Part shown: piece by piece, positions 23,047 through 62,198 of the stretch
Layout of the letters: every line of letters begins with the position of its first letter
Position numbering within the stretch: position 1 is the stretch's first letter
Assembly (NCBI GenBank): GCA_047495785.1
Contig: JBLDXI010000009.1
Coordinates: 4,712,001-4,776,000, forward strand
Direction: 5' to 3'
Length of the DNA stretch: 64,000 nt
Source of the DNA: Lepidodermella squamata
Lineage: Eukaryota; Animalia; Gastrotricha
Notes under the pieces: generated by a model
Told to the model about the DNA's origin: nothing
Database searches by the model: none
What the model saw: the letters and a program-made list of their open reading frames with translations, nothing else
Made by a program: the position numbers and the translations under genes

Positions 23047-24276
23047 TTAAGGTGAACACAAGAGGTGAATAAAAGCCGACGCGTGAATAGTCATAAGAAC
23101 GAGACTGAAAACAATGAAAGCAGTAAAATCAGCCAAATCCATAACATCGAAATGCGATGTCTTAATTGTTATTGAACTACGGCACCACTTATTTTTCGCA
23201 GCTCGGTAAGTCAGTAAAGCGTAAACTGTCATGACGATTCCGAAAATGAAATTAGCCATAATGCAGATGAAAATGCGCGGTGGCTGGGCGGTTGGCGGCA
23301 TGCTATCGAAAATTGTGCTTAAAATGAAACTGTACGCAAGAACCACAGTCACGCTGAAAACTGGCCGATCCGGAGTTCTAGCCGGGAAAATTAACGTGGC
23401 CAACTGCAGCGCGACTAGTCCATAACTCGGCATAATAGCTTTTATGAAGTAATACCGATAATCGCGTTTGAAACTCATGCCATAAAATATGTATGGGAAT
23501 CCTTCAATGACACTGATGTTGCTGTACGGTTCGCCAATCAACGTCCATGTGCTGCAAGGCGACACAAAATCCATACCGCTTGGCATCACTTTCGCCTCCT
23601 CGAAGAGTATTTGGTCCCCAGTGTTCCAGCATTCGATTGTGATCATGCAAGACATGGTGTCAAACGGGAAACGATCGAAATCAAACCCGATGCATGACGC
23701 GTCAATCCTGCCGGATGAATACCAGCTTGCACTTGAGATAAATGGTTTCACTTCGATGCCATAAGAATCCAGTTCACTGTTCAACAAAATAATTAATTGA
23801 AAATCACATGGATAGATCGATAACCTCGTAATGTCGGAAACTTGGGATGCCGAGCTTACATGTAACAACGTTGGATACCATATTTCCTCTTTTCCTCGCT
23901 TGAAGAAGAATTCGGCGAAATCGTCTGGGCAAGATTGAACATCGTCTTCTAAAAGAACTTGATTTATCGCCAAGGCCTCACAAAATGCCAAGGCATCACA
24001 TGGCAGCAGCCAAGTAACAGAAAGATCAGCATAAACCGACATTTTCTGCTCGACATCGCTAACTTCCAACAAGCTAAACAACGTCATGGAAGTGTTGGCT
24101 TTAATCGGGTAGATTCCAGCACCATTTACGTCGTAGATTAACTCCATCGCCATGTTTCGAGAAGCAGCTTGCGGGCAAACGTTGTAAAAGATTCCCTGTA
24201 TCCTACCTGTACCATTCAGCTTACCATCTGAGAACGATTGTAGCCAAAATGTCAAGAAGCAAATTGTCAACTTCAT
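23047..24276 (-). CDS. Atypical Cys-loop channel subunit, subfamily A (copy 1)
   Basis: Signal peptide; IWYPTL loop A; C-x14-C loop with FPFD; four TM helices; PARTPDRPVFSVTVVL. A 48-nt in-frame intron (GTTATC..AACAG) is read through in the ORF track. Confidence 0.9.
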   Translation of the reverse strand: MKLTICFLTFWLQSFSDGKLNGTGRIQGIFYNVCPQAASRNMAMELIYDVNGAGIYPIKANTSMTLFSLLEVSDVEQKMSVYADLSVTWLLPCDALAFCEALAINQVLLEDDVQSCPDDFAEFFFKRGKEEIWYPTLLHVSSASQVSDITRLSIYPCDFQLIILLNSELDSYGIEVKPFISSASWYSSGRIDASCIGFDFDRFPFDTMSCMITIECWNTGDQILFEEAKVMPSGMDFVSPCSTWTLIGEPYSNISVIEGFPYIFYGMSFKRDYRYYFIKAIMPSYGLVALQLATLIFPARTPDRPVFSVTVVLAYSFILSTIFDSMPPTAQPPRIFICIMANFIFGIVMTVYALLTYRAAKNKWCRSSITIKTSHFDVMDLADFTAFIVFSLVLMTIHASAFIHLLCSP

Positions 24277-48932: not shown

Positions 48933-50233
48933 ATGTGCAGGTTTTTTGCATTGGTATGCCTTATCCTGACGAGCACGATCGTGATCTTAGCCGCTAACGA
49001 TTCCAAAGCTATGCCCCCCATCAGAGTTGTGCCGCAACTTGCTAATACGAGCATAATCAAACGCATTTTCTTTGAAAGTTGCCCCGAGGTTGCGTCGACT
49101 GATCTCGATTACGAAACGGCCTATTCAAATGGCGGTAATAAACTCATCGAAGTTGGAATCTCGCTAGCCATCCACCACTTTATCGAAATCGACGACCTAG
49201 ATCAGCGGCTGTCTCTTTTTATCGACACGCGAGCAACGTGGACTTTGCCTTGCGATGCTGCACTGTTCTGTAAAAAACTGGAAGAGAGTGGTGGTTTTAT
49301 AGCTGGAGAGAAGATCAACGACTGCGACAAGAAATTCTCCGACTTTCAAATATGGGTTCCGATATCAGGAAGTTGGTACCCGATAATAATCCACAGAAAC
49401 GCAGCTGTTGATGCCTTTGATGTGATGAAGTGAGTTACAGCTGAAAAAATGACAAGATAATATTTCTTGAACCTATCCACAGGTCTATCACTGTTTCGAA
49501 AGTTAAGTTCCACCCATTTTCATCAAAGGGTAAATGGACGAGCAGAGGCCGGATAGATACGTCGTGTAATACGTTTTCATTCGCGAAATTTCCCTACGAT
49601 CAACTGATTTGTGTTCTCGACTTTGAGGCGGCAAACAGAGCTGAAATCATAAGATACAACGTGACTGAATTCATATCATACGAAGATTTAGAAACGTTGA
49701 CTGGCGAGACCGAGACCTGGCAAATTTTGAAGCCCCTTGAAGGCTGGTCGGAAATTTTTTACGACGGCAATACCCACAAAACACAGCTGTTTTTCCGAGT
49801 CCGCTTCAAGCGCAAACCACTGTACATTGTGCTTCAAACTATCGTACCTACGTATGCTCTGTACGTTCTACAAATCGCGGCTCTGATTTTCCCGGCTAAA
49901 ATACCTGATAGGCCTGTTTATAGTATGACCAACGTCCTGGCCTTCGCAGTATTGTTAACTGTTGTTTTCGATAGTATACCTGATACTTCTGAGCCAGTTT
50001 TACTGGTTTACCTCGTCACGATTAATCTCTTCTTCGGCGTGATAATCACAATTTATAGTTTGATTACTTTGAAATTTGCGTATGAATACTCAAAATTAGC
50101 CAAAAGGCCGATACATCTCACCAAAACCTGTCCAATCCAGCTTGTGACTTTGATCGATTATGTTATGCTGGCATTAACTATTTTGGTCTCAAGCGTTGTT
50201 CATGGCATACTGTATAATATTATGATTTCTTAG
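48933..50233 (+). CDS. Atypical Cys-loop channel subunit, subfamily C (copy 5), one intron
   Basis: Signal peptide, SWYPIIIHRNA, FPYD Cys-loop, PAKIPDRPVYSMTNVL. Confidence 0.92.
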
Positions 50234-50982
50234 ACCGATTAATCTGGTTCTCTCTTGTCAAAACACGTCAAACTAGCTTACTAGTGCGTTCCATTCCGGG
50301 AAGTAAAGTATGCGTTACGGTCAATTATTTGCAGTTTTTTGGATTTTAGGCACGAATTGTTGAAAGCGCAATGATTTTAGGAATCTTCCTTTTTGCTCCT
50401 TCTTTCGATTGATGCACTGCATGACTTCCTGGTACATTGGCGGTATAACCATTTCAAGGCAATCAGTTGCTAACTTTCCGTCCCTTTGTTCGTAGGCTTA
50501 GACAGAGTTCGATCGCAACTTTTCTCGTTAGCGGAGGGTGATTGTTGTTCCGCCCCTGCATCATCAGAGATTGATAAATGTCGAAACCTTTGAAATACGT
50601 CTGAAATAGGCCGATTGCTATACCGAGGGGTTTGAATATTGGAGAAGGCTAAAGAAGAGAGCAATATAATTGCAAAGAATCTAATGTTTGTAGCCAACCA
50701 CTAAGTAGCTATCTTCATATCCCATTGCTCGCAAGCTCCGAAAACACTTGCCAAAAGCACGCTCACAGCTATTGTCGAGCACAAGAACTGAACGCCCTCG
50801 AGGGATACCTTGAAGCTGAGCATTTTGGAAGAAATATGCCGATAAAGTAATGAAACGGATACTAAAATTCACCATATTTTATTCGATTAAATACAATTAG
50901 AGTATAAAGAAAAAGAGAAAGGGCAGATGATTCGAATTAATAAATCACTGGTTAATTATAAATGCTGAATTCAGCTTTCAGT

Positions 50983-52968
50983 CTATTGCGGCTCAGATCC
51001 AAATTTCAGCTTTCCATTCTCGTAGATGGGAATGCAGGGAGCTGGAGCTTCGTTGTTTGTAAGGCATTTCTTCGAGAAATCTGCTGAGCCATCCAAATTT
51101 CCTGATTTCAGCAGCTGGATGTTGAACTCGGTCTTTCGTTTCGATGCCCATCCCCAGCCTGGGTACATTGAGAATGGCGGGTAGGTAATGTCGCTGTAGA
51201 AAACAGTCTTCGAGCTCTTCCAGGCTTTCCAAGCGCTTATCGTTGAATTTTCCGAGTAGACCGACTGAATCTGCAAATCTCGAATGGTTAAATTCTGAGC
51301 AAGTAGTCGCGTTATGTCGACAAAGTAACGGAACGAGATTAATGTATCCCAACGCGGGGGCCATGACGTCATAGCTTGGGTTACAGTCTTAACTTGATAC
51401 ATCCTGGAATCCTGCTGAGAAACGAATGCTGAAATCGAGAATTCTTGACCCACGGTTTCTTTAGGTGGGAAAGTGGCCGTTAAGGCAGTTTGGCGGTATC
51501 GAGAGACCAAAGCTGCTGCTAGAGCCACCAAACCAGTTTGCATATCAAGCGAGCCTTCAGACTGGGCGGCGTTCATAATGTCATCAGCGTAGTTATCATT
51601 GACATCCGGGCCTCCAACCATCATGTAGTTGATATGACGATTAGCGTCTGGAGTTGCGGTAGAATGGTTCCAAGAACTATGGGTAGCTCTGTGATGCGTG
51701 TGGTTCGGCCATTTCGATCCAAACCCAACCAAATAGCTCATTTGCATCGGATTGCTGCCGAGGACGTAATTCATATGCTTCACGGCGAAATCTTCGTAAG
51801 ATTTAGCCTTCGCAGAGTCGAGGGTTTTGTTCGTATCAGCGTGTACCAACATGAGGAATGCAGCTGACATCGGGAATCGCAATGGGCCCCATGCCATTTG
51901 GTAGACGAAATGTCCATTATTAGTTTTCGGCTGTGTGTTCATGAAGTAATCAGCCCACCATTCAAATTTGGCTAGAGCTTCGGTCGAGTTGGTAAGCCGC
52001 CACAGAAGGTAGAAATTAACAGGATCTTGTGTACTGAAAGAAGGAGCACTAGACGGCCATTCGCGAAGAGCGTCTTGCGTCCTTCTATCAATCTCAGCTC
52101 TATATTGTGACTCATTTGTAGCCATGTACATAGCTAGAGCAGCAAGCAATTGTTCATCCTTGAAATCACCCCAAGATGCATAGAACGGAGCGGCCTCGGG
52201 TATGGAAGCGTCGTACTTTCCTGGGTACTTGATAGAGAAGTCGTAGAGTTCGCGGGCGTGACGTAGCGTTTCAGCTGAGTAGGTACTATTCACATTCCTG
52301 AACAGCATTGAAGTGAAAGCCAGAGCTGCAGACGCTAATCCAGTGACGTCACTTCCAGGCCTATCCGCAGTGACTTTGTAGCTAGTTCGTTGCTTGATAG
52401 GCATGAACTCAGGCGGGCCCCAATAGCCGTGATCAGTTCCATTGCCAACCATAGCGTAGAATTCGTAGGGCGACGGGTGGCATTTGATGAAGTAGTCCGA
52501 GCCCCATTTCACAACATTCAGCAACCGCTGCCATTCTTTACCAGTACTATTGTAAGTCGCCGAGTATTGAACACCACTGAAGGCTAGCATATACATCGAA
52601 TAGGCCATAGGAAGGCTGAATTTGATGAAATCCCCGGCGTCGTAGTAGCCACCGGTCAAATCGAGACCGACGTCTTTGCCGTCATCCATCGCGCTGTTGC
52701 CGCGCCAATTCAGGGTGTTGAAAGTTCCGGTGATGTTTCCAGACATCTGGCCGTAGTAGAAGGTCAGCGACATGCCTAAGACATGGGCGTAGTTGTATAG
52801 CGGCGGAGCACGGGTAGTGGTAGTAGCTTTGGTAGTAGTAGTTCTTGTCGTTGTAGTTTTCACCGTTGTTGTAGTCGTCGGTTTTGGCGTTGAAGTTCGA
52901 GTGGTTTGACAACCAGCCAAGACGACTGATGCGAGAAGCAGCGATGAAATTTGTAAAAGCTTTGTCAT
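50983..52968 (-). CDS. Secreted GH9 endoglucanase with C-terminal CBM3c, intronless, 661 aa
   Basis: DLTGGYYDAGD catalytic-base motif; WGSDYFIKCH; HTHHR; MVGGPD..YADD....SEG (acid Glu). The C-terminal module WPPR..ISFRYFVDI..YPG..IPIYENGKLKFGSEP matches the CBM3c of T. fusca Cel9A / clostridial Cel9G-type enzymes as I recall them. Confidence 0.95.
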   Translation of the reverse strand: MTKLLQISSLLLASVVLAGCQTTRTSTPKPTTTTTVKTTTTRTTTTKATTTTRAPPLYNYAHVLGMSLTFYYGQMSGNITGTFNTLNWRGNSAMDDGKDVGLDLTGGYYDAGDFIKFSLPMAYSMYMLAFSGVQYSATYNSTGKEWQRLLNVVKWGSDYFIKCHPSPYEFYAMVGNGTDHGYWGPPEFMPIKQRTSYKVTADRPGSDVTGLASAALAFTSMLFRNVNSTYSAETLRHARELYDFSIKYPGKYDASIPEAAPFYASWGDFKDEQLLAALAMYMATNESQYRAEIDRRTQDALREWPSSAPSFSTQDPVNFYLLWRLTNSTEALAKFEWWADYFMNTQPKTNNGHFVYQMAWGPLRFPMSAAFLMLVHADTNKTLDSAKAKSYEDFAVKHMNYVLGSNPMQMSYLVGFGSKWPNHTHHRATHSSWNHSTATPDANRHINYMMVGGPDVNDNYADDIMNAAQSEGSLDMQTGLVALAAALVSRYRQTALTATFPPKETVGQEFSISAFVSQQDSRMYQVKTVTQAMTSWPPRWDTLISFRYFVDITRLLAQNLTIRDLQIQSVYSENSTISAWKAWKSSKTVFYSDITYPPFSMYPGWGWASKRKTEFNIQLLKSGNLDGSADFSKKCLTNNEAPAPCIPIYENGKLKFGSEPQ

Positions 52969-53027
52969 TTCGTTATGGAGAATTGAGTTTAAAATTACAG
53001 ATTGAAATGGCTGCGTAAATTAGGGCG

Positions 53028-53035
53028 TATTTATA
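53028..53035 (-). promoter_or_regulatory. TATA box of the GH9 gene
   Basis: GGC-TATAAATA-CGCC ~60 nt upstream of the ATG; AATAAA at 50878-50883 (minus strand) ~100 nt after the stop. Confidence 0.6.
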
Positions 53036-53805
53036 GCCAGTGCACCAGTGGGCGCATTTAGTTTTTTGCCAAAAAAACCAGCATTCGTGCTGTTTGTTTC
53101 AAATGCTGCGATTAACGTGCGCACTCATTAGGCGACGCTTTTCTCGAAAAAAATGGCGTTCACTGTGGCTGTAACGTCTGTCATGAAGCAATATGTGGCG
53201 GCTTTAGGTTTTGAGACGGTTGTTTTCGTATTTGTTACGAGTCACGTGTTGCAAACGGTTTGACGTTCGAACATTATAAAAGAGTGTTAAAAGTGCCAGG
53301 ATTTAACAAAAGAATGACGTAGAAACCAACGTCAAACCACCCACAAGCAAAAAACTCAAGTTAAGTCTTCACCAAACAAAATACCACAATCCAGTGCAAT
53401 TTTGAAAATCCGAGTCCACGCAAACTCAATATTGCTATGTAAATTTGATGAATGCTAAGTTGGCCGGGTTTTCCAATCGAATGGCGCTAACTTCCGCAGC
53501 GTTTTTCGCATGGTCATGTTTCATGTTTTCGAAACTGCAACTAGCTCACGCAGTTTCTTACCAAGACCTCTACGGTAGCAGGAAAAATGATTTCCGCGTT
53601 AGTGAAAGTTTGGCGGCTGTTATGGTGCCTTATATTTTAGTGTCATTTGTTTTGCAGTAGTCTCAAAAAAGCTGACCCATTTATAACCGAAAATTTAACT
53701 TCGTAATTCACGAACGAATGCATGATAATCAGTAAATGACTTGCGTGATCACTCTAAAATGTCGAAAAATGAGTCGGTATCTAGGCCAATTTTTTAAGGT
53801 CATGT

Positions 53806-53967
53806 CTATGTGAACACAGAGGATTGTGTATCGCCCATAGGCTATGCGTACACATTGTGTGTGCGTGATTGGCTACTTGAACACTTGCGCGGTTAAATTT
53901 GGCTGTCTGTCACGCACTTTATGTACGCATAGCCATTGGGCGATACACTTTTCCTGTGTTCACATAG
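53806..53967. mobile_element. Short MITE with ~45-bp imperfect TIRs
   Basis: CTATGTGAACACAG..GTGTATCGCCC..GGCTATGCGTACA is mirrored by TGTACGCATAGCC..GGGCGATACAC..CTGTGTTCACATAG. Confidence 0.75.
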
Positions 53968-54214
53968 CCACATCCATTTTTTAATGGGCTTTTTAACTGG
54001 GCGAATTTGGCTTTATTTCTCTTTACCAATTATTATTTGATTAGGCAGGTTAACAAGGCACATTTCACGCTACTCATGGAAGGAGATAATAAAATTGCCG
54101 AAAAAGCACGTTCTAATGGTTATCAAACGTCGACCCGTTATCACGCATAGCTTTATGAGCTCGATGACACCTCCGAGTACGGATATGTACACAGTCGGTT
54201 ATTAGATCTACAAA

Positions 54215-54508
54215 ATGACAGCCAGGTCATCTAAACACCAAGTAGCTGCAGATCAACCCCGCAACGCCGATGGCCGTTTTGTAAGCTCGAAGCCAACACC
54301 CCAACGTCACCATACAGCCAGACGGGTTCTTTGTAAGTCATGTTACCAGTCCTTTCGAGATTCAAGTGGACTCCGTCGGCACTTATCCAGAGGATGCTGC
54401 AAATCGCTCTCGTCAAAACCTTCTGACGAAGTGATCGAAACTCACCTGGATTGGGCTCGAGCACATGCCAAGTCGCAAAAATCAGGGCGTCTAAAAAAAG
54501 CTCGGTGA
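54215..54508 (+). CDS. Small basic protein with one C2H2/C2HC-type zinc finger, 97 aa
   Basis: CKSCYQSFRDSSGLRRHLSRGCC fits C-x2-C-x3-F-x5-L-x2-H; AAAATG start context; AATAAA overlapping the stop. Confidence 0.55.
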   Translation: MTARSSKHQVAADQPRNADGRFVSSKPTPQRHHTARRVLCKSCYQSFRDSSGLRRHLSRGCCKSLSSKPSDEVIETHLDWARAHAKSQKSGRLKKAR

Positions 54509-54962: not shown

Positions 54963-57206
54963 TTAATAGAGCAGGACTTGATTATTGCGGCCGTGGGTTG
55001 TTCGCGCTGAACTTGTCCGGCTGTTGACGTAGCTCAATCGATGCCCGGATTTGTTCATTATCACGAAGGGCCGTTCACTCATAGGTGAGATACGTCCACT
55101 CGTTTTGGTCTTGGTAAAGCTTTTCCTATAACAAAGATCGGAATTATTACTGAAACATAAGTTTGAAGAAGTTTCAACTTACTTGCACATGTAGACAGTG
55201 ACAAGAACAACAAGCGAGACGAGGATCAGCGCTCCGATAACAATTAGCATGACAGACCACCACGGAAGGTTATTAACCATCACATCACTCGTGTCATGGT
55301 GTTTTTGGGTTGAAGGAGGATTATCTATTACAGCCTTGGTGGTAGTGTCAATCTGCCGGCCAGCTTCTGCACCCAAATCAGCTGTTGTGCTCACTTCCTT
55401 CGTAGTGGTTTTCGATGTAGCAGTTGTAGTAGTCGTGGTACTTGAGGTTGTTGTAGTTGGCTGGGTTGATTTTGTAGTTACAGGGACATTCCTCTCAATA
55501 TCACTGATGATGCTCTTCAGAGGATCTGAGAGACTCAGTTCGATCAAAATAGGCGGGGAACTCGTCGCGATTGGCTCATGGTACGGCGTTGGGGTTTCCT
55601 CGGGCTCGGGCAGTTTTTCCGGGGTCGTGGCTCTGGTCTTGAGTTGGGTAGTCGATGAACTTCGGGATGAAGATCTCGCCATTGTCGAAGAACTTCTAAC
55701 TGCTTGCGTAGGGGTAGATTTTCTTGTTGTTGTAAGAGTTGTAGTTGTAGGGGTAGTCGTAGATTCAGTAGTAGAAGAGACAGTATCAGCTGAATTCTCA
55801 TCCAAAGCCGGGGCTGAGCATATGAACCGCATTGTTGTGATGTCTGAATCCTGAGTTCTAGTGCAAGGCCTCGATCTCCAGCCATAAACCAAATCATCCC
55901 CAGCCAACGAGCCGACAACTAAATCAGCGCATGAGTTGACTTCTGGGACAACTGGCTCATTCGGCGATGCCCAGCCTTCCCTCATGTAAAGGGCGGAATC
56001 ATCAGGGAAATACCAGTCCTTACTCGATGCGCCGATCCAAGCTAGGCTAGCTTTGATGTTAGGATCGGATAGAATTCCGGTGATCAAGTTTTGCCTTTCT
56101 TCGCTTTCAATAGTTGCGAGGCGGCCGCCGGCTTTGATGCAGAACTTATCGGCAGCCTGCCAGTTGAGCTCGGGTGTTGAGAAGTAGTAAAAACAAGCGT
56201 TCAGAGAACAGGCGGACCGGTCTGCTCCGAACGGCTGGGCTTTTGTATCTACTGGAATGATTTAAGATGGGGGAACAGGAAATTATAAGATAGTCCAAGA
56301 AATAGAACTAGAGGGTTGGCATGCACATTCACCTTTTTAATTCTATCGAATTCTATAGAAAGGGTTAGAGGTTCAGGAAAAAGGAATGGAAAGGAAAGGA
56401 AAGATGAAAGCGCATGCCATGTCCTAAGGAGATTGAAGGACGGGCAAATACTTACCGAATTTGCAGAAGAAAGGCAGTGCCATGCTGCAGCTTGTGTCAA
56501 CCCAAGGGTTCGAATTTGTATCCACCTTAATAGCCGCGCAGTTCCCACCCGTAGTCGGCCTACCAGGCAGCCAATTGTCATAGGCATCTTCTGCTACGAA
56601 GTACAACGCAGAGTTATATGCGCTACCACACTGCTCAGATCTCCGACCAGTACAAGGCGATGAGCAGTTGTTCGCAGTTTCGTCCCATACGTATTTCGGC
56701 GAGCAATAGCAATAAGAGCCGTCTTGAATAGCCGCGTAGATGTTGAAATGAAACTCATTCGACCGGTCTTGGGCGCAGAATTCAACGCATCGATCTGTGG
56801 TCATAGAATCGACCGAATATGTATTGGTCAAAGATGCGATTAAATCAGCGTTTGATTTCGCTCGAACACAGCCCTGACCTCGGACTAGGGTGCCATCTGC
56901 AGTCCAAGTCCAGGCGGTTTGCCGATATTTCAGCCCGATCATCGCATCGCTCCAGTGAAGGGTCTTTAACGAAGTAGCTAAGAAGTACTGCTCACCAGGG
57001 GAACGAACATTTGCTAAGGCTTTATTCCGACTAGCGCAGTAAGTCGAGCCTGTATCGTATAGCGACGCGTCCAGTGGTAAATCTTTGATAGGAAGTTCCA
57101 CAAATTCGAAACAGCTCGAACCAAGAAGCTTGTCGTTATCGTGAGGGCACGGCTGGCCTTGAGCGCTCGAAAGCGCTACTAGGGTGACCAAAAACGCTGA
57201 TAACAT
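54963..57206 (-). CDS. Type I membrane lectin A: CTLD[WSC]-CTLD-mucin stalk-TM-tail; exons 57206-56456, 56248-55183, 55125-54963
   Basis: Signal peptide; CTLD motifs; 8-Cys WSC pattern (GC..MT..C..C..YAAIQ.G.YCYC..C..PC.G...CG); Thr-rich stalk; TM LPWWSVMLIVIGALILVSLVVLV. Confidence 0.88.
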
Positions 57207-58602
57207 TACAATCACCTCACGATGTCACCATAATCGAGGTTTGATAAATAGGAATTTTCCAAATTAAGATATGGGGTAATGCAATTGATCAAGTAATTGT
57301 CCTATAAACTAAATATAGAAAAATTAAAAACATCTTAAGACTGCTTCTTTAGGGCACGGTGTTTACTGTGATGTGGGTAAGAAGGTTTTGTGAAAACCGG
57401 ATTTATCCCGGTGCAGAAATGCGATACAGGCGATTTTTTCACGCCTAGAGCAGCTGCTGCCTTAAGCTTGTGCAGTTTTGATGGGCGGTGTGTGGCGACA
57501 ATAAATACCGACTCGTCTTATAATGTTGTCTATATGCGTCGTCGCAATATCTGGCCAGCCGCTGGAGTGAGCGCGCGGCGCGTCGATAATTTTGCGTAGC
57601 TACCTCATCGCGGCGCATCAAATATTCAACGCAAGCAAGCTGCTAAAAGCGTGCTTTGTTTATGGCGCATTGCACGCGCGCGCTCGCGCTTTGTTTTTAT
57701 TTGCCGCATTTTGCGGTATTAGGTGCACAACCACTGGCCACTGGCATATAGGCTGGTCAGTACACTGCGTCAGGCGATACGCGTGACCGCACCATGGCGC
57801 CCATCTCTGGCGTATCGATTCGCAAACTCCCCCACTCACAAAACTTAACAAAAACGCATAGCCTTTTTACACCTAGGGAAAAACTTCGATTTTCACCATG
57901 TCGTTTTTAGATTTTGCGTTCGTTCTCATGGGAATAATTGTTCTCTGGACTATTGTCTAGCAAAAAGCACCCTGCTGTTCTGAGCGCGAGGGTGGCCAAC
58001 AATCAAAACCTGAAAAACAAACGAAAGAAGCATTTTAGGCCTTGCTGATTCTAAGCCTGGTCAGAAATTGATATAGAAAACCAAAAAATGATTTCGGTTG
58101 TTATCCAAGCTCCTCCGATTTGTACTTAACATGTATAAAGGATAAACAATCTAATGATGTATAATGAATAGAGCCGCTTTGAGGGTGAGAAATGATATTC
58201 TGGGACAAACATGCACCATCGCTCCTGCCTAGCAAACAACATAAGCCGCCATTAATCGATGTTAGATTACTGTGGTTGCCTTTCGAGGAAATTGTTCTCC
58301 TGAGACAGAGTGATCTAAAATCTAATGATTCATGTTCATTTATCATTTAAACAAGAAATCAACATTTCACCTCATCAAACCCGTTTATTTATGAAAATTG
58401 TCAAGACTAACAAAATAAGTCGAAGGAACAACAAAAAACAACAAATAGAAGCAGATGAAATTTTGTTAAGAAGACAGCCATTTTTGTTGAAAATTTTCAA
58501 AGAAAATCAATAAGAAAAAATGTGTATGCTATTGCTGCGAATTGCGCAATCATCAATTAAGTTTGCATATTTTGTTGTGTATCATACAAAATCTAATTGC
58601 TA

Positions 58603-61465
58603 TCAGTAGTACATAGTTTGACTTCGGCCAGAGTTCATTGTTGACTCGACATTTGTAGCTTCAGGCCGCCTGCTGCGCCTTTTCAGATCCGGGGAGACTC
58701 GTTTGCTGGGTTTCCTAGTAAAAAAAAAAGAAAATGAATTATTACCAAAATTCTCGAAGCATCAGCAATTTTGAGATAATATGAAAAGTGAAAATGTTGT
58801 AAAAATAAATAAGGGTAGTTGAATTGGTAAATTAGGAAATAATGTGTTAGTAAATCATGCACGAACTTTACTACGAAAATGATGACCGCTGTTAGTGCTG
58901 CAATTAACAGTGTTGCCGCGAGGACTATGAGCATAATGCCCCACCAGGGCATCTCTCGCTTCGAAGCATCTGCATCGCCATCATACGAAGAAATCGCTTG
59001 AAAGCCCCCAGCGTTAGAATCATTAACAGTAATGATAGGTTTGTTAGTGATAGTCGTAGTGCTGATGGGAGGCGTAGTGGAGTTAGTAGCATTTGTTGGA
59101 GAATCATCAATGTAATCATAAGTACTATCACTATTACCGTCTTCAGCATAATCAAGGCCTGGTTTTAGAGTGTTCAATGTAACACCAGGCCGGCGAGTTC
59201 TTTTGTTAGGATCTGGGGTTGTAGAAAGGATTCGTGACGGGGCTGAGCAGACTAGTCGATTAGGGAAGTTATCCATGTGACTGCAAGTTCGGCTCTTCCA
59301 GCCGAAAACCGGGCCTTCAGCTGTTTTGAGGACTGTAACCACCCCTTCAGCGCAGGATAACACGTTAGGGAAGGCTGGTTCGTCAGGGGATAGCCACCCA
59401 CGGAAATTAGGAACCGTATAATCACTGTAGTACCAGTCGTTGTTGCTGGCCCCAATCCAAACCTGAGAAACATTAACTAATCGCGAGACTAGGGTGTTCA
59501 CCATGTCTTGACGTTCCTGAGAGTCTGTGATACAAAATGGAGATGGTGAAGAGAACTTGGCACTGAGCCAAATCTTACCGACTGTCGCGAGGAAACCACC
59601 AGATTTACTGCAGAAGTTGTTAGCATCGGCCCAGCTTAGCTGGGGTTGCGTGTAAAGGTAGTAACATGTGTCGTTATTACCACACGCCATTGATTTCACG
59701 TTCATGATAGGTACATTACTGTTGATATCTGGAAAAAAATCTCGTATTATTATATTTTTATGAGAGGTAACTAACAACTATGACAATGATTTAAGAACGA
59801 AAGATTGAACTAAGCTAAAGGTCATAGGGCTACAACAATGAATACTGAAGGTATAACTGGGGAGAGGATTCTTGAAGCTCACACGTTTGAGTCCAATTAT
59901 CTAATTTCACAAATAGCTCTAGAGGCCTTGTGGTGACTGAATAAGCAAATCGTTTTGTGATAAAGAGTTTTCCAGCTTTGAAAAATAGGTAAAAGGTTTA
60001 CCATAGCGGCATAAAAATGGCCGTGCGTATGAGCAGCTCACATCGACCCATTCGTTGTTAGCATTGTCGACTTGAACAGCAGCGCAGCTTCCGCCGACAC
60101 TTGGTCGGCCCTTCTTCCAGTTGTCAAAGGCGAACTCTAAAAGAGGTAAAAAAAACAAAAAAGAAAATTACGCCCTTCTTTGACATTGCTGTCAGTGATA
60201 CCAAACCCACATGAATGAGGCTTATAGCGTTAAATTAGAGGCTGGCGAGGCAAGTAAAACGCCAGTCGAAGAACAAATTAGTTCCATTGGCTAGTTGGCT
60301 AGTTGGCTATTTGGTTATTTGGCTAGTATTAAAGATTGAAAATTTTGCTGAAGCACTGGAGCTCATTAAAATAATATCGTTCATCAGCCCACCTTCGTTT
60401 CTGAAGATTTTGTAGAATTCAAAATTCAACCAATTAAGTCTATCCAACCTAAGAAGTAAGAAGGGCAGTACAATAAGTATTGGGATGCCCATAAGCTAAA
60501 AGCTCATATAAGGTTAAAGCTTGGCTTCTCACTACATATAGGCAACCTGAAAGCTGCAAAGTCTGAACTTCTAGACAAGCTAGTCTACATCATTATAGAT
60601 GTTTGAAAATTTCTATGGCTTCTATGGCTAATATCGTCTCGGCTGACTGGGGCTGGCTGGAGGTAAGTATTTATAGAATCTAGAGGTCGCAAATTTGGGT
60701 TCGCTAATATGAAAATTTCTGAGCCTTAATGAAAAACCACCATTGCAACCTTAGCGGATTCAGTGATGAGCGAACTACCAAACCAATTTAAATACCGTCT
60801 ATAATAATTAGATCATCTAATGTCATTAAAAAAGCGCATTTATTTAATAAAAAATTCTTACCAGCTGTGTAGTACACATAGCTGTTCGTATAGCTACCAC
60901 ACAGCTGTTCAGGCACACCAGAACACGGCAAGTCGCATTTGGACGCCGGCTGCTTCCAAATGTGTGACGGCGAGCAGTAGCAAAACGACCCAGCCATGAC
61001 CGCAGCGAATTGATTACCGCCCTTCGAACAGTACGCAATACAACCGTCATTGCTCATCATTTGCGAATACTCGCTCGACAACTTTGAAGTATCAATATCT
61101 CGAACCTCGTTACAGCCCTGGCCTCGAAGCATAAGTGGCGAACGATCCGCCCACTTCCAGCCAGCCTTTTTATACCGAAGGCCTATCATAGCTCTAGTCC
61201 AACCTAGGGAAACGAAGCGCTTGGCTATTTCGCGTTGTTCGGCTACATTTCGTATCGTAGCCAAGGTTTTGTTTCGAGTTGCGCAAAATGCGGCAGCTGC
61301 TTCGTAAGTCATTTGCTCAGTGGCAGGCATTTCGACAAATTCGTAACAAGTTGTATCAAACAATGAGTCTGTTTGAGAGTTAGGACACGCCCTTGGAGGG
61401 GCAGGCGTGGTTCGAGCCCAGACTGCGATGAACAGCGCTGGGAAAACCACGAAAATTCTTAACAT
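58603..61465 (-). CDS. Type I membrane lectin B, paralogue of 54963-57206; exons 61465-60862, 60136-60002, 59728-59579, 59524-58867, 58714-58603
   Basis: Same domain order; TM MPWWGIMLIVLAATLLIAAL; GT-AG introns with compatible phases. Confidence 0.88.
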
Positions 61466-62198
61466 TTCAAAAGTTAGCCTAGAAAAACGGGGAAATTTGC
61501 TAGAAACTGTGTAAGAAAAACAGCTTTTTACACGTAAAGATATCTTAGAGGGAAGGCTTTGAAAAACAATCATTCGATCGAGTTACGCGCGGTTTTTTGT
61601 CTAGTTGCCGCGCAACTACTACGGCAGATGAATAATTGAGCCAGTGCGTGTAAGACATCTCAGTTTTTTGCCATTCGCCTTGATGTAGGATGTAGTTGAT
61701 CACACACAAAAAAAATCTGCCCTTTAGCTACGGCGGGCGAGTGTGTTGCGCGTAGCGACGCATTTTTGGCGTCGAAAAAGCTTTTAATTGATCACATGGC
61801 GTTGAGAAAACATAGCTTGGGTTATAGGTAAGCGTCATTTTTCCTGAGCACTCGAAAAAACACTCGGTTGAGGGCAATTTTTTCGGGCAATTTCGCGCAA
61901 GTGCGTTGAACAGTGCTAATTATATAGCGAAGCAAAATGTTGTACGACATCGGGTTTTGGTATATGCGGATTAGTTTAGGGGTCTATTAAAGCGACACAT
62001 GACCTGAAGGTCGCGTGCCATCTGCACGTGTCTGCTTTTTCTGCGAAAAATACAGAAGAATGAGCTGGCATTATAAATACGACACTCAGTTTTATTTTGT
62101 CATTGGAAAATTTCGGAAAATAAAGAAAAATCGAGGAAAAATTCACAGAATCATTAAATAATCAAATGAGAATTACGTCTAGTTTTTGCATTTTTAGC

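What the first reader, a model, noticed from the sequence alone, without database searches (positions are those of the whole stretch)
50983..52968. Bacterial-type GH9-CBM3c cellulase embedded and apparently domesticated in an animal genome
Known: endogenous animal GH9s generally lack CBM3c, and GH9 fused to CBM3c is typical of processive endoglucanases of Actinobacteria and Clostridia (Cel9A/E4, Cel9G). Seen: the gene is intronless among intron-containing neighbours and contiguous with metazoan genes. It has a TATA box, a poly(A) signal, a Thr-rich linker and 11 N-x-S/T sequons. Inference: horizontal transfer followed by adaptation to the eukaryotic secretory pathway, possibly allowing digestion of algal or plant cellulose.
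Basis: partly seen in the sequence, partly recalled or inferred. Interest (0 to 1): 0.8.

Follow-up and report, generated by a model that had tools for sequence, protein, structure and literature searches.

The report
Giant-virus-type cellulase gene in gastrotrich
A tiny freshwater invertebrate (probably the gastrotrich Lepidodermella squamata) carries one intact, transcribed, intronless gene for a two-domain cellulase (GH9 + CBM3c) that is not the usual animal cellulase; its closest relatives sit on giant-virus genomes from environmental samples, so it was most likely acquired by horizontal transfer and kept in use.

Summary
Window 50983-52968 (-) is an uninterrupted 661-codon ORF: signal peptide, Thr-rich disordered segment, GH9 catalytic domain with its catalytic residues intact, and a rigidly attached CBM3c. 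A TATA box lies upstream and AATAAA downstream. Its neighbours are metazoan genes with GT-AG introns.

RNA-like contigs from two independent studies cover the gene without an intron. One carries a template-switch oligo at 52998, about 30 nt downstream of the TATA box. Allelic differences are mostly synonymous (pN/pS 0.11).

Horizontal transfer followed by domestication is supported. An AU test rejects grouping with canonical metazoan GH9s (p 0.0001).

The donor is probably not a bacterium directly. The gene sits (100/99 support) in a clade of unnamed environmental GH9-CBM3c genes (36-50% identity in the catalytic domain; best bacterial-type hits 37-43%). Their contigs carry giant-virus signatures: Nucleocytoviricota-type Rpb1 and Rad50-like ATPase, and the Mimiviridae AAAATTGA promoter. 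Several already have eukaryotic signal peptides.

Caveats: the assembly comes from MDA-amplified DNA, and no independent read bridges the gene to host genes. Activity is untested.

The scan earlier noted a different giant-virus-derived gene elsewhere in this genome (s1-430880).

The parts
53028..53035 (-). TATA box (TATAAATA), 30-37 nt upstream of the observed mRNA 5' end
   Evidence: Sequence read; position relative to the RNA contig end
52969..52998 (-). 5' UTR (30 nt). The mRNA 5' end at 52998 abuts a template-switch-oligo sequence in run X2, with no spliced leader
   Evidence: contig 50967-52998; the loose end beyond 52998 reads CCCCATGTACTCTGCGTTGATAC, the reverse complement of the SMART oligo (my own knowledge of the oligo)
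50983..52968 (-). Complete intronless CDS, 661 codons plus TAG stop
   Evidence: colinear RNA contig; 13 synonymous vs 5 nonsynonymous allelic differences
52909..52968 (-). Signal peptide, about residues 1-20 (MTKLLQISSLLLASVVLAGC), judged by inspection; ends in a lipobox-like LAGC
   Evidence: Translation; disordered in the model; no signal-peptide predictor was available
52798..52908 (-). Thr-rich, probably O-glycosylated, largely disordered segment (residues 21-57; pLDDT < 50 for residues 1-42), absent from all relatives
   Evidence: the neighbouring host lectin gene has a similar Thr-rich stalk
51496..52797 (-). GH9 catalytic domain (residues 58-491): (alpha/alpha)6-type helical domain; D110/D113 (DAGD) and E471 correspond to E4 D55/D58/E424
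50986..51480 (-). CBM3c module (residues 497-661), a beta-sandwich packed on the catalytic domain with no flexible linker
   Evidence: whole-model TM 0.88-0.92 to GH9+CBM3c crystal structures
50887..50982 (-). 3' UTR as far as RNA-like contigs were shown
   Evidence: X2 contig 50887-50965; X2/X3 contigs from 50967
50878..50883 (-). AATAAA poly(A) signal candidate; the cleavage site is not mapped
48933..50233 (+). Context: host Cys-loop receptor-like gene with a short GT-AG intron (49431-49482), 750 bp from the cellulase stop codon
55179..57215 (-). Context: host C-type lectin/WSC gene with a GT-AG intron, a Thr-rich stalk and a TM anchor, about 2.2 kb upstream of the cellulase start

Best explanation
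This is a single gene for a secreted, theme-B-type GH9 endoglucanase with a rigidly attached CBM3c. It was acquired horizontally by the lineage of this spiralian animal (probably the gastrotrich Lepidodermella squamata). The source was a lineage of GH9-CBM3c genes that today is found on giant-virus (Nucleocytoviricota) genomes in environmental samples. That lineage's ultimate origin is presumably the bacterial theme-B enzymes.

Shown: the gene lies between host genes in the assembly. It is transcribed as an unspliced mRNA that appears capped and starts about 30 nt downstream of its own TATA box. Its alleles differ mostly at synonymous sites. It keeps the catalytic Asp-Asp-Glu set and the two-domain fold.

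Inferred: the protein enters the secretory pathway, is N- and O-glycosylated, and hydrolyses beta-1,4-glucan. The CBM3c would feed a cellulose chain into the cleft, as in Cel9A/E4. The likely role is in the gut, on algal or detrital cellulose. The direction of transfer (virus or its protist host to animal) is also inferred, from the animal gene being a single branch nested among many virus-associated ones.
For: Architecture and fold: pLDDT 90.8; TM 0.88-0.92 over about 620 columns to BlCel9A, Cel9G, CelR, E4, CelQ.

Catalytic residues: 65 of 81 family-conserved positions are kept, including D110, D113 and E471; most departures are shared with the clade.

Phylogeny: careful ML tree of 65 catalytic domains places the window gene with 6 virus-like sequences at 100/99 and in a 9-row clade at 100/100. 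The same holds with 155 rows and with L011 added. AU test rejects window + metazoan GH9s, delta lnL 137, p 0.0001. The window protein shares two deletions and motifs with clade members P0001 and P0002. The CBM3c alone is closest to P0001, 117 bits against 69 for Bacillus. A clade profile scores members above 1030 bits against 642 for the best bacterial protein.

Viral nature of relatives' contigs: L006/7 has Rpb1 in Nucleocytoviricota clusters at 0.97-0.99, plus DUF5757, 2C_adapt and GH7+CBM1. L003, the closest relative's contig, has a Rad50-like ATPase in Nucleocytoviricota clusters at 0.98-0.99 plus F-box/ankyrin genes. L011 and L001 have the AAAATTGA octamer upstream of 6/15 and 2/3 ORFs, 19 copies against 5.8 expected in L011. 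L010 has Pox_A22.

Integration and use in the animal: flanking metazoan genes with introns. DNA-like run X1 has even depth of 64-117 over the gene and both flanks, and one contig crosses the stop codon into the flank. RNA-like contigs come from two further studies, one with a template-switch oligo at 52998. pN/pS is 0.107, p 7e-6. GC3 is 0.52, like host exons at 0.44-0.52. The Thr-rich segment resembles the neighbouring host lectin's. No other viral ORF matches the window.

Against: No read or contig that I could see bridges the cellulase to a host gene independently of the assembly.

The published assembly that this genome matches was made from MDA-amplified DNA, which produces chimeras. X1 is probably that same data set.

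Only some contigs of the clade carry clear viral hallmarks. L002, L008, L009 and the short contigs of P0019 and P0132 are merely compact and ORFan-rich, and L011's neighbours (AA9, TPR-U-box, C2H2 zinc fingers) would also fit a compact AT-rich protist.

The IMG/VR scan found no relative.

Nesting of the animal gene inside the virus-like group is only marginally supported (AU p 0.024, with the group chosen after seeing the tree), and the tree is unrooted.

The window branch is long (0.8 changes per site).

Some cleft residues differ from characterised enzymes: the E4 W256 segment is deleted, and Y318 is F in the window protein. Activity and processivity are not shown.

The 3' end and polyadenylation are not mapped.
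Confidence: 0.72

Rival explanations
1. Direct transfer from a cellulolytic bacterium (Firmicutes or Actinobacteria) into the animal. On this view the virus-like relatives are independent recipients from the same unsampled bacterial group.
For: GH9 fused to CBM3c is overwhelmingly a bacterial architecture: 188 of the 277 proteins in my set have an adjacent CBM3c, and all named ones among them are bacterial. The best solved structure is Bacillus licheniformis Cel9A. The signal peptide ends in a lipobox-like LAGC.
Against: An exhaustive HMMER search of 1.84 billion cluster representatives finds no bacterial-type sequence above 43% identity in the catalytic domain, while clade members reach 46-50%. 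The window gene is inside a 100/100 clade whose contigs carry giant-virus signatures. It shares indels and active-site-proximal substitutions with clade members and not with Bacillus.
Confidence: 0.1
2. The donor was a protist (for example the host of those viruses, or an AT-rich amoebozoan-like organism eaten by the animal), not a virus. The viruses and the animal would each have taken the gene from protists.
For: L011's neighbours (AA9 LPMO, TPR-U-box, C2H2 zinc-finger proteins) and L001's mitochondrial carrier are eukaryote-type genes. Clade members have eukaryotic signal peptides and CBM1 modules. A bacterivorous or algivorous animal ingests protists constantly.
Against: Those same contigs show the Mimiviridae promoter octamer. 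Other clade contigs carry viral Rpb1, DUF5757, 2C_adapt and a viral-type Rad50-like ATPase. No clade member carries a name from any sequenced protist.
Confidence: 0.12
3. Assembly artefact or contamination: the gene belongs to a virus or microbe in the culture and was joined to animal DNA by an MDA chimera.
For: The matching published assembly used MDA and had 370 non-metazoan contigs removed. X1 is probably the assembly's own data. The RNA contigs do not reach host genes.
Against: It would need two chimeric joins, each within about 1-2 kb of the gene, carried through HiFi consensus. X1 depth is even across the gene and flanks, and the alternative haplotype covers both. GC3 equals that of host exons. 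The TATA box sits about 30 nt from an apparently capped 5' end and lies in the assembled flank. Identical RNA comes from two other studies dated 2014 and 2015. The Thr-rich segment is host-style. pN/pS between haplotypes is 0.11, with synonymous divergence of 3.7%.
Confidence: 0.04
4. Ancient vertically inherited eukaryotic or metazoan GH9 that kept a CBM3c lost everywhere else.
For: Metazoan GH9s belong to the same broad subfamily as theme-B enzymes: termite 1ks8 scores 293 bits against the full-length query, with 39% identity in the structural alignment.
Against: The AU test rejects a window + metazoan GH9 clade, p 0.0001. Spiralian molluscs have the canonical form in that clade. The window gene has no introns. 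No other animal sequence falls in the window's clade.
Confidence: 0.02

Closest known systems
Theme-B processive endoglucanases: Thermobifida fusca Cel9A/E4, Clostridium cellulolyticum Cel9G, C. thermocellum Cel9I/CelQ/CelR, Bacillus licheniformis BlCel9A
   Same: Same two-domain architecture with CBM3c fused directly to the GH9 barrel. The whole-model TM is 0.88-0.92. The catalytic residues D55/D58/E424 and H125, Y206, W209, W313 and R317 are all conserved.
   Different: Only 33-37% identical overall. The window protein has two deletions (the E4 W256 segment is missing) and substitutions near the catalytic acid (SEGS instead of NEVA). It has a eukaryotic-style signal peptide plus a Thr-rich N-terminal segment and no further CBM, dockerin or Fn3 modules. 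It is encoded in an animal genome.
Canonical endogenous metazoan GH9 cellulases (termite NtEG 1ks8, earthworm EF-EG2 3wc3, Perinereis 4zg8; Mytilus, Aplysia, krill, ascidian and hemichordate genes)
   Same: Same GH9 catalytic fold and catalytic residues; secreted animal enzymes.
   Different: They form their own clade, lack CBM3c and, by published accounts, contain introns. The window gene is excluded from that clade (AU p 0.0001), has CBM3c and has no intron.
Horizontally acquired animal cellulases: nematode GH5 and GH45, beetle GH45/GH48/GH5, Pristionchus GH5, tunicate GH6 and CesA (PMC3032686, PMC8826503, PMC6509783, PMC10334666)
   Same: A foreign cellulase gene integrated in an animal genome, expressed, under selection and presumably dietary.
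   Different: Different GH family and architecture. The donors there are bacteria or fungi; here the nearest relatives are giant-virus-associated. The recipient phylum, probably Gastrotricha, had no record of this in the papers I could search.
Environmental giant-virus GH9-CBM3c genes (P0121 on L003-5, P0001 on L001, L011, P0172 on L006/7, P0124, P0019, P0002)
   Same: Same clade (100/99). Shared indels with P0001 and P0002, and FPPxETVGQE and IPIYENGKLxFGSEP motifs in the closest members. Substitutions W275L, W279A, Y331A and Y476M are shared with most of the clade. Several have signal peptides.
   Different: They sit in compact viral-type contigs. Most end in an (S/T/P)-rich linker plus a Cys-rich tail or CBM1, which the animal gene lacks. 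The animal gene instead has an N-terminal Thr-rich segment, a TATA promoter and host codon usage.

Membership tests
Glycoside hydrolase family 9 (CAZy GH9 / Pfam PF00759) | Sequence match to the family model above the curated threshold | tested here: met
   372.9 bits against a cut-off of 27.7, model positions 1-443 of 444
Glycoside hydrolase family 9 (CAZy GH9 / Pfam PF00759) | (alpha/alpha)6 barrel fold | tested here: met
   AF2 model with pLDDT 90.8 and helices over residues 60-491; Foldseek TM 0.91-0.94 to GH9 catalytic domains
Glycoside hydrolase family 9 (CAZy GH9 / Pfam PF00759) | Two catalytic Asp in DAGD plus a Glu proton donor (E4 D55, D58, E424) | tested here: met
   D110, D113 and E471 align exactly; the roles of these residues are from the literature, as I recall it
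Glycoside hydrolase family 9 (CAZy GH9 / Pfam PF00759) | Hydrolysis of beta-1,4-glucosidic bonds | not testable with these tools
   Needs an enzyme assay
Theme-B GH9-CBM3c processive endoglucanases (Cel9A/E4 type) | CBM3c immediately after the catalytic domain, without a flexible linker | tested here: met
   Continuous alignment of residues 58-660 to E4, Cel9G and BlCel9A; the C-terminal 166 aa hit CBM3c modules only
Theme-B GH9-CBM3c processive endoglucanases (Cel9A/E4 type) | CBM3c packed so that its flat face extends the catalytic cleft | tested here: met
   Whole-model superposition, TM 0.88-0.92, rmsd 2.2-3.3 A over about 620 columns. This is a predicted model, not an experimental structure
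Theme-B GH9-CBM3c processive endoglucanases (Cel9A/E4 type) | Processive endo-activity on crystalline cellulose | not testable with these tools
   Needs the soluble/insoluble reducing-sugar ratio on filter paper or Avicel, with and without the CBM3c
Ancestral metazoan GH9 lineage | Placement inside the metazoan GH9 clade | tested here: not met
   A separate clade at 100/99; the AU test rejects the union, delta lnL 137, p 0.0001
Ancestral metazoan GH9 lineage | Catalytic domain only (no CBM3c), intron-bearing gene | tested here: not met
   CBM3c is present; the RNA contig is colinear with the genome
Giant-virus-associated GH9-CBM3c clade (unnamed) | Strongly supported monophyly with genes on Nucleocytoviricota-type contigs | tested here: met
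   100/99 and 100/100; viral signatures on L003, L006/7, L011 and L001
Giant-virus-associated GH9-CBM3c clade (unnamed) | Shared derived indels and substitutions | tested here: met
   Two deletions shared with P0001 and P0002 relative to Bacillus; W275L, W279A, Y331A and Y476M shared with most clade members
Giant-virus-associated GH9-CBM3c clade (unnamed) | Residence in a viral genome | tested here: not met
   It is flanked by host genes, and no other viral-contig ORF matches the window. It is a transferred copy, not a provirus
Functional horizontally acquired animal gene | Physical linkage to host genes confirmed independently of the assembly | tested here: inconclusive
   Even depth and a contig crossing the stop codon in X1, but X1 is probably the assembly's own MDA data, and no bridging record to a host gene was shown
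Functional horizontally acquired animal gene | Expression and selective constraint in the recipient | tested here: met
   RNA-like contigs in X2 and X3 with a template-switch oligo at the 5' end; pN/pS 0.107

The most novel reading that the evidence does not exclude
A giant virus, not a bacterium, delivered a ready-made, secretion-competent processive cellulase to an animal. The gastrotrich lineage fixed it and uses it to digest cellulose. The same uncultured giant viruses carry whole cellulolytic toolkits (GH9-CBM3c, GH7-CBM1, a GH9-GH48-CBM2 fusion, AA9, GH10, PL14). This would be a rare documented case of a functional metabolic gene passing from Nucleocytoviricota into a metazoan.
Probability: 0.5. 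Interest if true: 0.8.

Novelty: new variant of a known kind. Interest (0 to 1): 0.68.

Why it matters
Horizontally acquired cellulases are known in nematodes, beetles and tunicates. In those cases the donors are bacteria or fungi, and the enzymes are single-domain GH5, GH45, GH48 or GH6.

Here an animal has the full GH9-CBM3c processive-endoglucanase architecture. It coexists in evolutionary terms with the canonical metazoan GH9 lineage but is clearly separate from it, and its nearest relatives sit on giant-virus genomes.

If the viral route holds, three things follow:
- Giant viruses become a plausible vector for moving metabolic genes that already work in eukaryotic cells into animals.
- It supports, from a second locus, the earlier unverified note that giant-virus DNA entered this genome.
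- It exposes a cellulose-degrading gene set in uncultured giant viruses. I found almost nothing on this in the papers I could search; one 2025 preprint calls a cellulase-like gene 'potentially novel' for cultivated viruses (PMC12338748).

It also gives a direct, testable handle on how a microscopic detritus and algae feeder obtains carbon.

Tried and rejected
- The IMG/VR viral-contig scan with an alignment of the window protein and three relatives found no relative. This is a pattern-based search, so a blank is weak evidence.
- The first attempt at a metagenome scan failed because the 9-sequence alignment was too diverse. The repeat with 4 sequences gave only 2 loci.
- Rfam on the whole window found nothing.
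- The word-indexed protein searches missed most clade members, including P0121, because only 8000 candidates were scored. The exhaustive HMMER job was needed.
- P0081, which looked like a possible CBM-less eukaryotic relative, is only a truncated Bacillus haynesii protein.
- My early guess of a cnidarian host, based on the window's peptide-precursor note, was wrong. The Kv channel's best named hits are Spiralia, and earlier notes plus assembly statistics point to a gastrotrich.
- Literature hits for CBM3 in ascidians concerned only the CBM3a-GFP staining reagent.
- No terminal repeats or transposon ends flank the gene. The only nearby repeat is a MITE-like inverted repeat about 860 bp upstream, so no insertion mechanism can be proposed.
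- The AAAATTGA motif is not directly upstream of the GH9 genes themselves, and it is absent from L003 and L006.
- I could not map the poly(A) site.
Full report
**1. The observation**

The minus strand of the window holds one uninterrupted ORF, 50983-52968, of 661 codons.

- Pfam places a full-length GH9 domain at residues 60-483, E 4e-111.
- Against all solved structures, residues 58-660 align in one piece with two-domain GH9+CBM3c enzymes: BlCel9A 8u49 at 418 bits, CelR 7unp, T. fusca E4 1js4 at 348 bits, and Cel9G 1g87. Animal GH9 structures (termite 1ks8, earthworm, Perinereis) match the catalytic part only.
- The last 166 residues searched alone hit nothing but CBM3c modules, including the separately expressed CBM3c chain 2xfg_B at E 6e-16.
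- An AlphaFold model built on a 62-sequence alignment is confident (mean pLDDT 90.8, pTM 0.88). Residues 1-42 are disordered, residues 60-491 are helical, and residues 510-656 form a beta-sandwich.
- The whole model superposes on the GH9-CBM3c crystal structures with target-normalised TM 0.88-0.92 over about 620 columns. The CBM3c is therefore packed on the barrel as in the processive endoglucanases.
- E4's catalytic D55, D58 and E424 correspond exactly to D110, D113 and E471. H125, Y206, W209, W313 and R317 are also kept.
- Of the 81 columns that are at least 90% conserved in 146 other GH9s, the window protein keeps 65. Most departures are shared with its clade.

- TATAAATA at 53035-53028 and AATAAA at 50883-50878.
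- A Thr-rich segment at residues 21-57.
- 11 sequons, against 5.1 +/- 1.9 expected, p 0.0045.

**2. The surroundings and the host**

The neighbours are metazoan:
- a tandem array of divergent Cys-loop receptor genes, the nearest ending 750 bp from the cellulase stop codon;
- C-type lectin/WSC genes, the nearest with a Thr-rich stalk and a TM anchor;
- a Shaker-type Kv channel exon, an ENT transporter fragment and a PAN-domain ORF.

Canonical GT-AG introns are visible in the Cys-loop gene (49431-49482) and the lectin gene (about 56455-56254).

The Kv exon's best named relatives are all Spiralia (leech, nemertean, molluscs, Macrostomum, Lingula), at only 42-46% identity. Earlier notes of this scan call the genome probably the gastrotrich Lepidodermella squamata. 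The published assembly of that species (122 Mbp, 157 contigs, 43% GC, sequenced together with C. elegans) fits the scan's genome and the run table. That paper does not mention horizontal transfer, cellulases or glycoside hydrolases.

**3. Is the gene really in the animal, and is it used?**

Three runs from three studies hold the stretch.

- **X1 (2024, DNA-like).** It covers the gene and both flanks at even depth (64-117), apart from a high-copy repeat at 53733-54100. It shows an alternative haplotype about 1-1.5% different, and one contig crosses the stop codon 176 bp into the flank. X1 is probably the assembly's own MDA-amplified data, so it is not independent for the junctions.
- **X2 (2015).** One 2055-nt contig is identical to 50967-52998 with no gap, at depth 146 against 0-13 on the flanks. 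Beyond 52998 it runs into CCCCATGTACTCTGCGTTGATAC. I recognise this as the reverse complement of the SMART template-switch oligo (my own knowledge). That marks a capped 5' end 30 nt upstream of the ATG and 30-37 nt downstream of the TATA box, with no spliced leader, although this genome reportedly trans-splices.
- **X3 (2014).** It has contigs only on the gene.

Further evidence for use in the animal:
- Between the window and the X1 haplotype, the 534 covered codons carry 13 synonymous and 5 nonsynonymous differences, giving pN/pS 0.107, p 7e-6.
- GC3 is 0.52, like host exons at 0.44-0.52.
- The window holds one copy only, and no other ORF from any relative's contig matches it.
- No terminal repeats flank the gene.

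I put contamination or chimera at about 4%. It still needs a bridging molecule to be closed.

**4. Where the gene comes from**

A word-indexed search gave two unnamed Logan proteins (43% and 39% identity), then Bacillus haynesii at 37%, then Clostridia and Actinobacteria.

An exhaustive HMMER search with the catalytic domain against 1.84 billion cluster representatives found a closer one: P0121, 50% identity, 439 bits. Bacterial-type sequences followed at no more than 43% and about 350 bits, and animal GH9s at about 258 bits.

Named members show that the canonical metazoan clade is present in the set. It includes a scale insect, krill, Phallusia, Saccoglossus, Mytilus, Aplysia and Mizuhopecten, with a Bryopsis alga nearby, and none has CBM3c.

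Trees:
- In ML trees (155 rows quick; 65 rows careful, LG+C20+F+G4) the window gene is sister to six unnamed sequences at 100/99. It sits inside a nine-row clade at 100/100, while the metazoan-type GH9s form their own group elsewhere.
- Forcing the window gene into the metazoan clade costs 137 log-likelihood units, p-AU 0.0001.
- Forcing the eight virus-like rows to exclude it costs 29.8, p 0.024. This is marginal, and the group was chosen after seeing the tree.

Other support:
- The window protein shares two deletions and several motifs with clade members P0001 and P0002.
- The CBM3c alone is closest to P0001.
- A clade profile separates members (above 1030 bits) from the best bacterial protein (642 bits), and no member has a name from any source.

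**5. What the relatives are**

Their contigs are compact, intron-free and rich in ORFans.

- **L006/7 (P0172).** It carries an Rpb1 whose nearest clusters are Nucleocytoviricota (0.97-0.99), plus DUF5757, 2C_adapt, a cathepsin, PL14, GT25 and a GH7+CBM1 cellobiohydrolase.
- **L003-5 (P0121, the closest relative).** It carries a Rad50-like ATPase in Nucleocytoviricota clusters (0.98-0.99 by features, and also by structure), plus SWIB, F-box/ankyrin genes and a GH10 fragment.
- **L011 (69% to P0001; 17-23% GC) and L001.** Both show the Mimiviridae early-promoter octamer AAAATTGA upstream of 6/15 and 2/3 ORFs, with 19 copies against 5.8 expected in L011. The motif's meaning is from my own knowledge of the literature.
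- **L010 (the more distant P0188, a GH9-GH48-CBM2 fusion).** It has Pox_A22 and an IS605-type transposase.

Several clade enzymes have eukaryote-type signal peptides, (S/T/P)-rich linkers and CBM1 or Cys-rich tails.

The remaining contigs are too short to call, and L011's neighbours would also fit a compact protist. I therefore give a protist donor about 12% and a direct bacterial donor about 10%.

An earlier, unverified note reports another intronless giant-virus-type gene beside a broken viral primase elsewhere in this genome. That fits viral DNA having entered this lineage.

**6. How it most likely works**

Shown:
- an apparently capped, unspliced transcript from a TATA promoter;
- an intact catalytic triad;
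- the theme-B two-domain fold;
- purifying selection.

Inferred:
- The hydrophobic N-terminus directs the protein into the ER.
- The Thr-rich segment, unique to the animal copy and similar in style to the neighbouring host lectin's stalk, is O-glycosylated. The enriched sequons are N-glycosylated.
- The secreted enzyme cuts beta-1,4-glucan with the CBM3c guiding a chain into the cleft, as in Cel9A/E4.

Substitutions in distal subsites (the W256 segment is deleted, and Y318 is F) may alter processivity or substrate range. A gut role on algal or detrital cellulose is the simplest guess for a freshwater gastrotrich.

**7. Comparison and novelty**

It works like, and by every sequence and fold criterion is, a GH9 theme-B enzyme. 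It is not a member of the ancestral metazoan GH9 lineage.

Horizontally acquired cellulases in animals are a known kind (PMC3032686, PMC8826503, PMC6509783, PMC10334666). This one is a new variant in three respects: its architecture, its recipient phylum and, most interestingly, its apparent giant-virus source. In the papers I could search, giant-virus cellulases are barely mentioned, and nothing links them to animals.

**8. Verdict**

Interest is 0.68.

Noticed in passing
L006:3-1631 (-), L006:4870-6675, L006:12882-13823; L010:2451-6557; L011:5968-8998; L003:3198-3806: The giant-virus-like contigs carry whole plant and algal cell-wall toolkits. These include GH7+CBM1 cellobiohydrolase, GH9, PL14, a 1368-aa GH9-GH48-CBM2 fusion, GH9-CBM3 next to an AA9 lytic polysaccharide monooxygenase, and a GH10 fragment. 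This suggests uncultured giant viruses that attack cellulose-walled hosts.
   Followed up: partly
C-termini of P0001, P0019, P0121, P0124, P0132 and L011:5968-8025: Most viral clade members end in an (S/T/P)-rich linker followed by a short Cys-containing tail (for example WQCQQCVAA, WQCKKCKSI, RCKQCVIEKII, KCTQCVWKSLAA). P0001's tail reads like a CaaX box. The animal copy lacks this tail entirely. Its function is unknown.
   Followed up: no
window 53733-54100 (inverted repeat arms 53826-53882 / 53892-53948): A MITE-like inverted repeat about 860 bp upstream of the cellulase has word depth 1800-2500 in run X1, against about 80 for the flanks. It is a high-copy host repeat.
   Followed up: partly
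window about 23000-50300: A tandem array of at least six very divergent Cys-loop (pentameric ligand-gated channel) genes, which barely reach Pfam thresholds. One (23047-24276, minus strand) is a 409-aa single-exon ORF. This looks like a lineage-specific receptor expansion.
   Followed up: no
window 55179-61573 (-): Tandem C-type lectin + WSC genes. The one nearest the cellulase has a long Thr-rich mucin-like stalk and a C-terminal TM anchor, compositionally like the cellulase's N-terminal Thr-rich segment. No nucleotide repeat of 18 nt or more is shared between them.
   Followed up: partly
window 52909-52920 (- strand; residues 17-20): The signal peptide ends in L-A-G-C, which matches a bacterial lipoprotein lipobox. 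This is probably coincidence, since the viral relatives have ordinary signal peptides.
   Followed up: no
window 49680-50303 and 53672-54332, run X2: X2 contigs on the low-depth flanks show many 'opposite strands' joints (palindromic contigs). These are probably library or assembly artefacts. None occurs inside the cellulase.
   Followed up: no
window 54215-54508 (+): A 97-aa ORF with a C2H2-like CxxC...HxxxxxxC motif lies between the repeat and the lectin gene. X2 has low RNA-like depth there. It has not been characterised.
   Followed up: no
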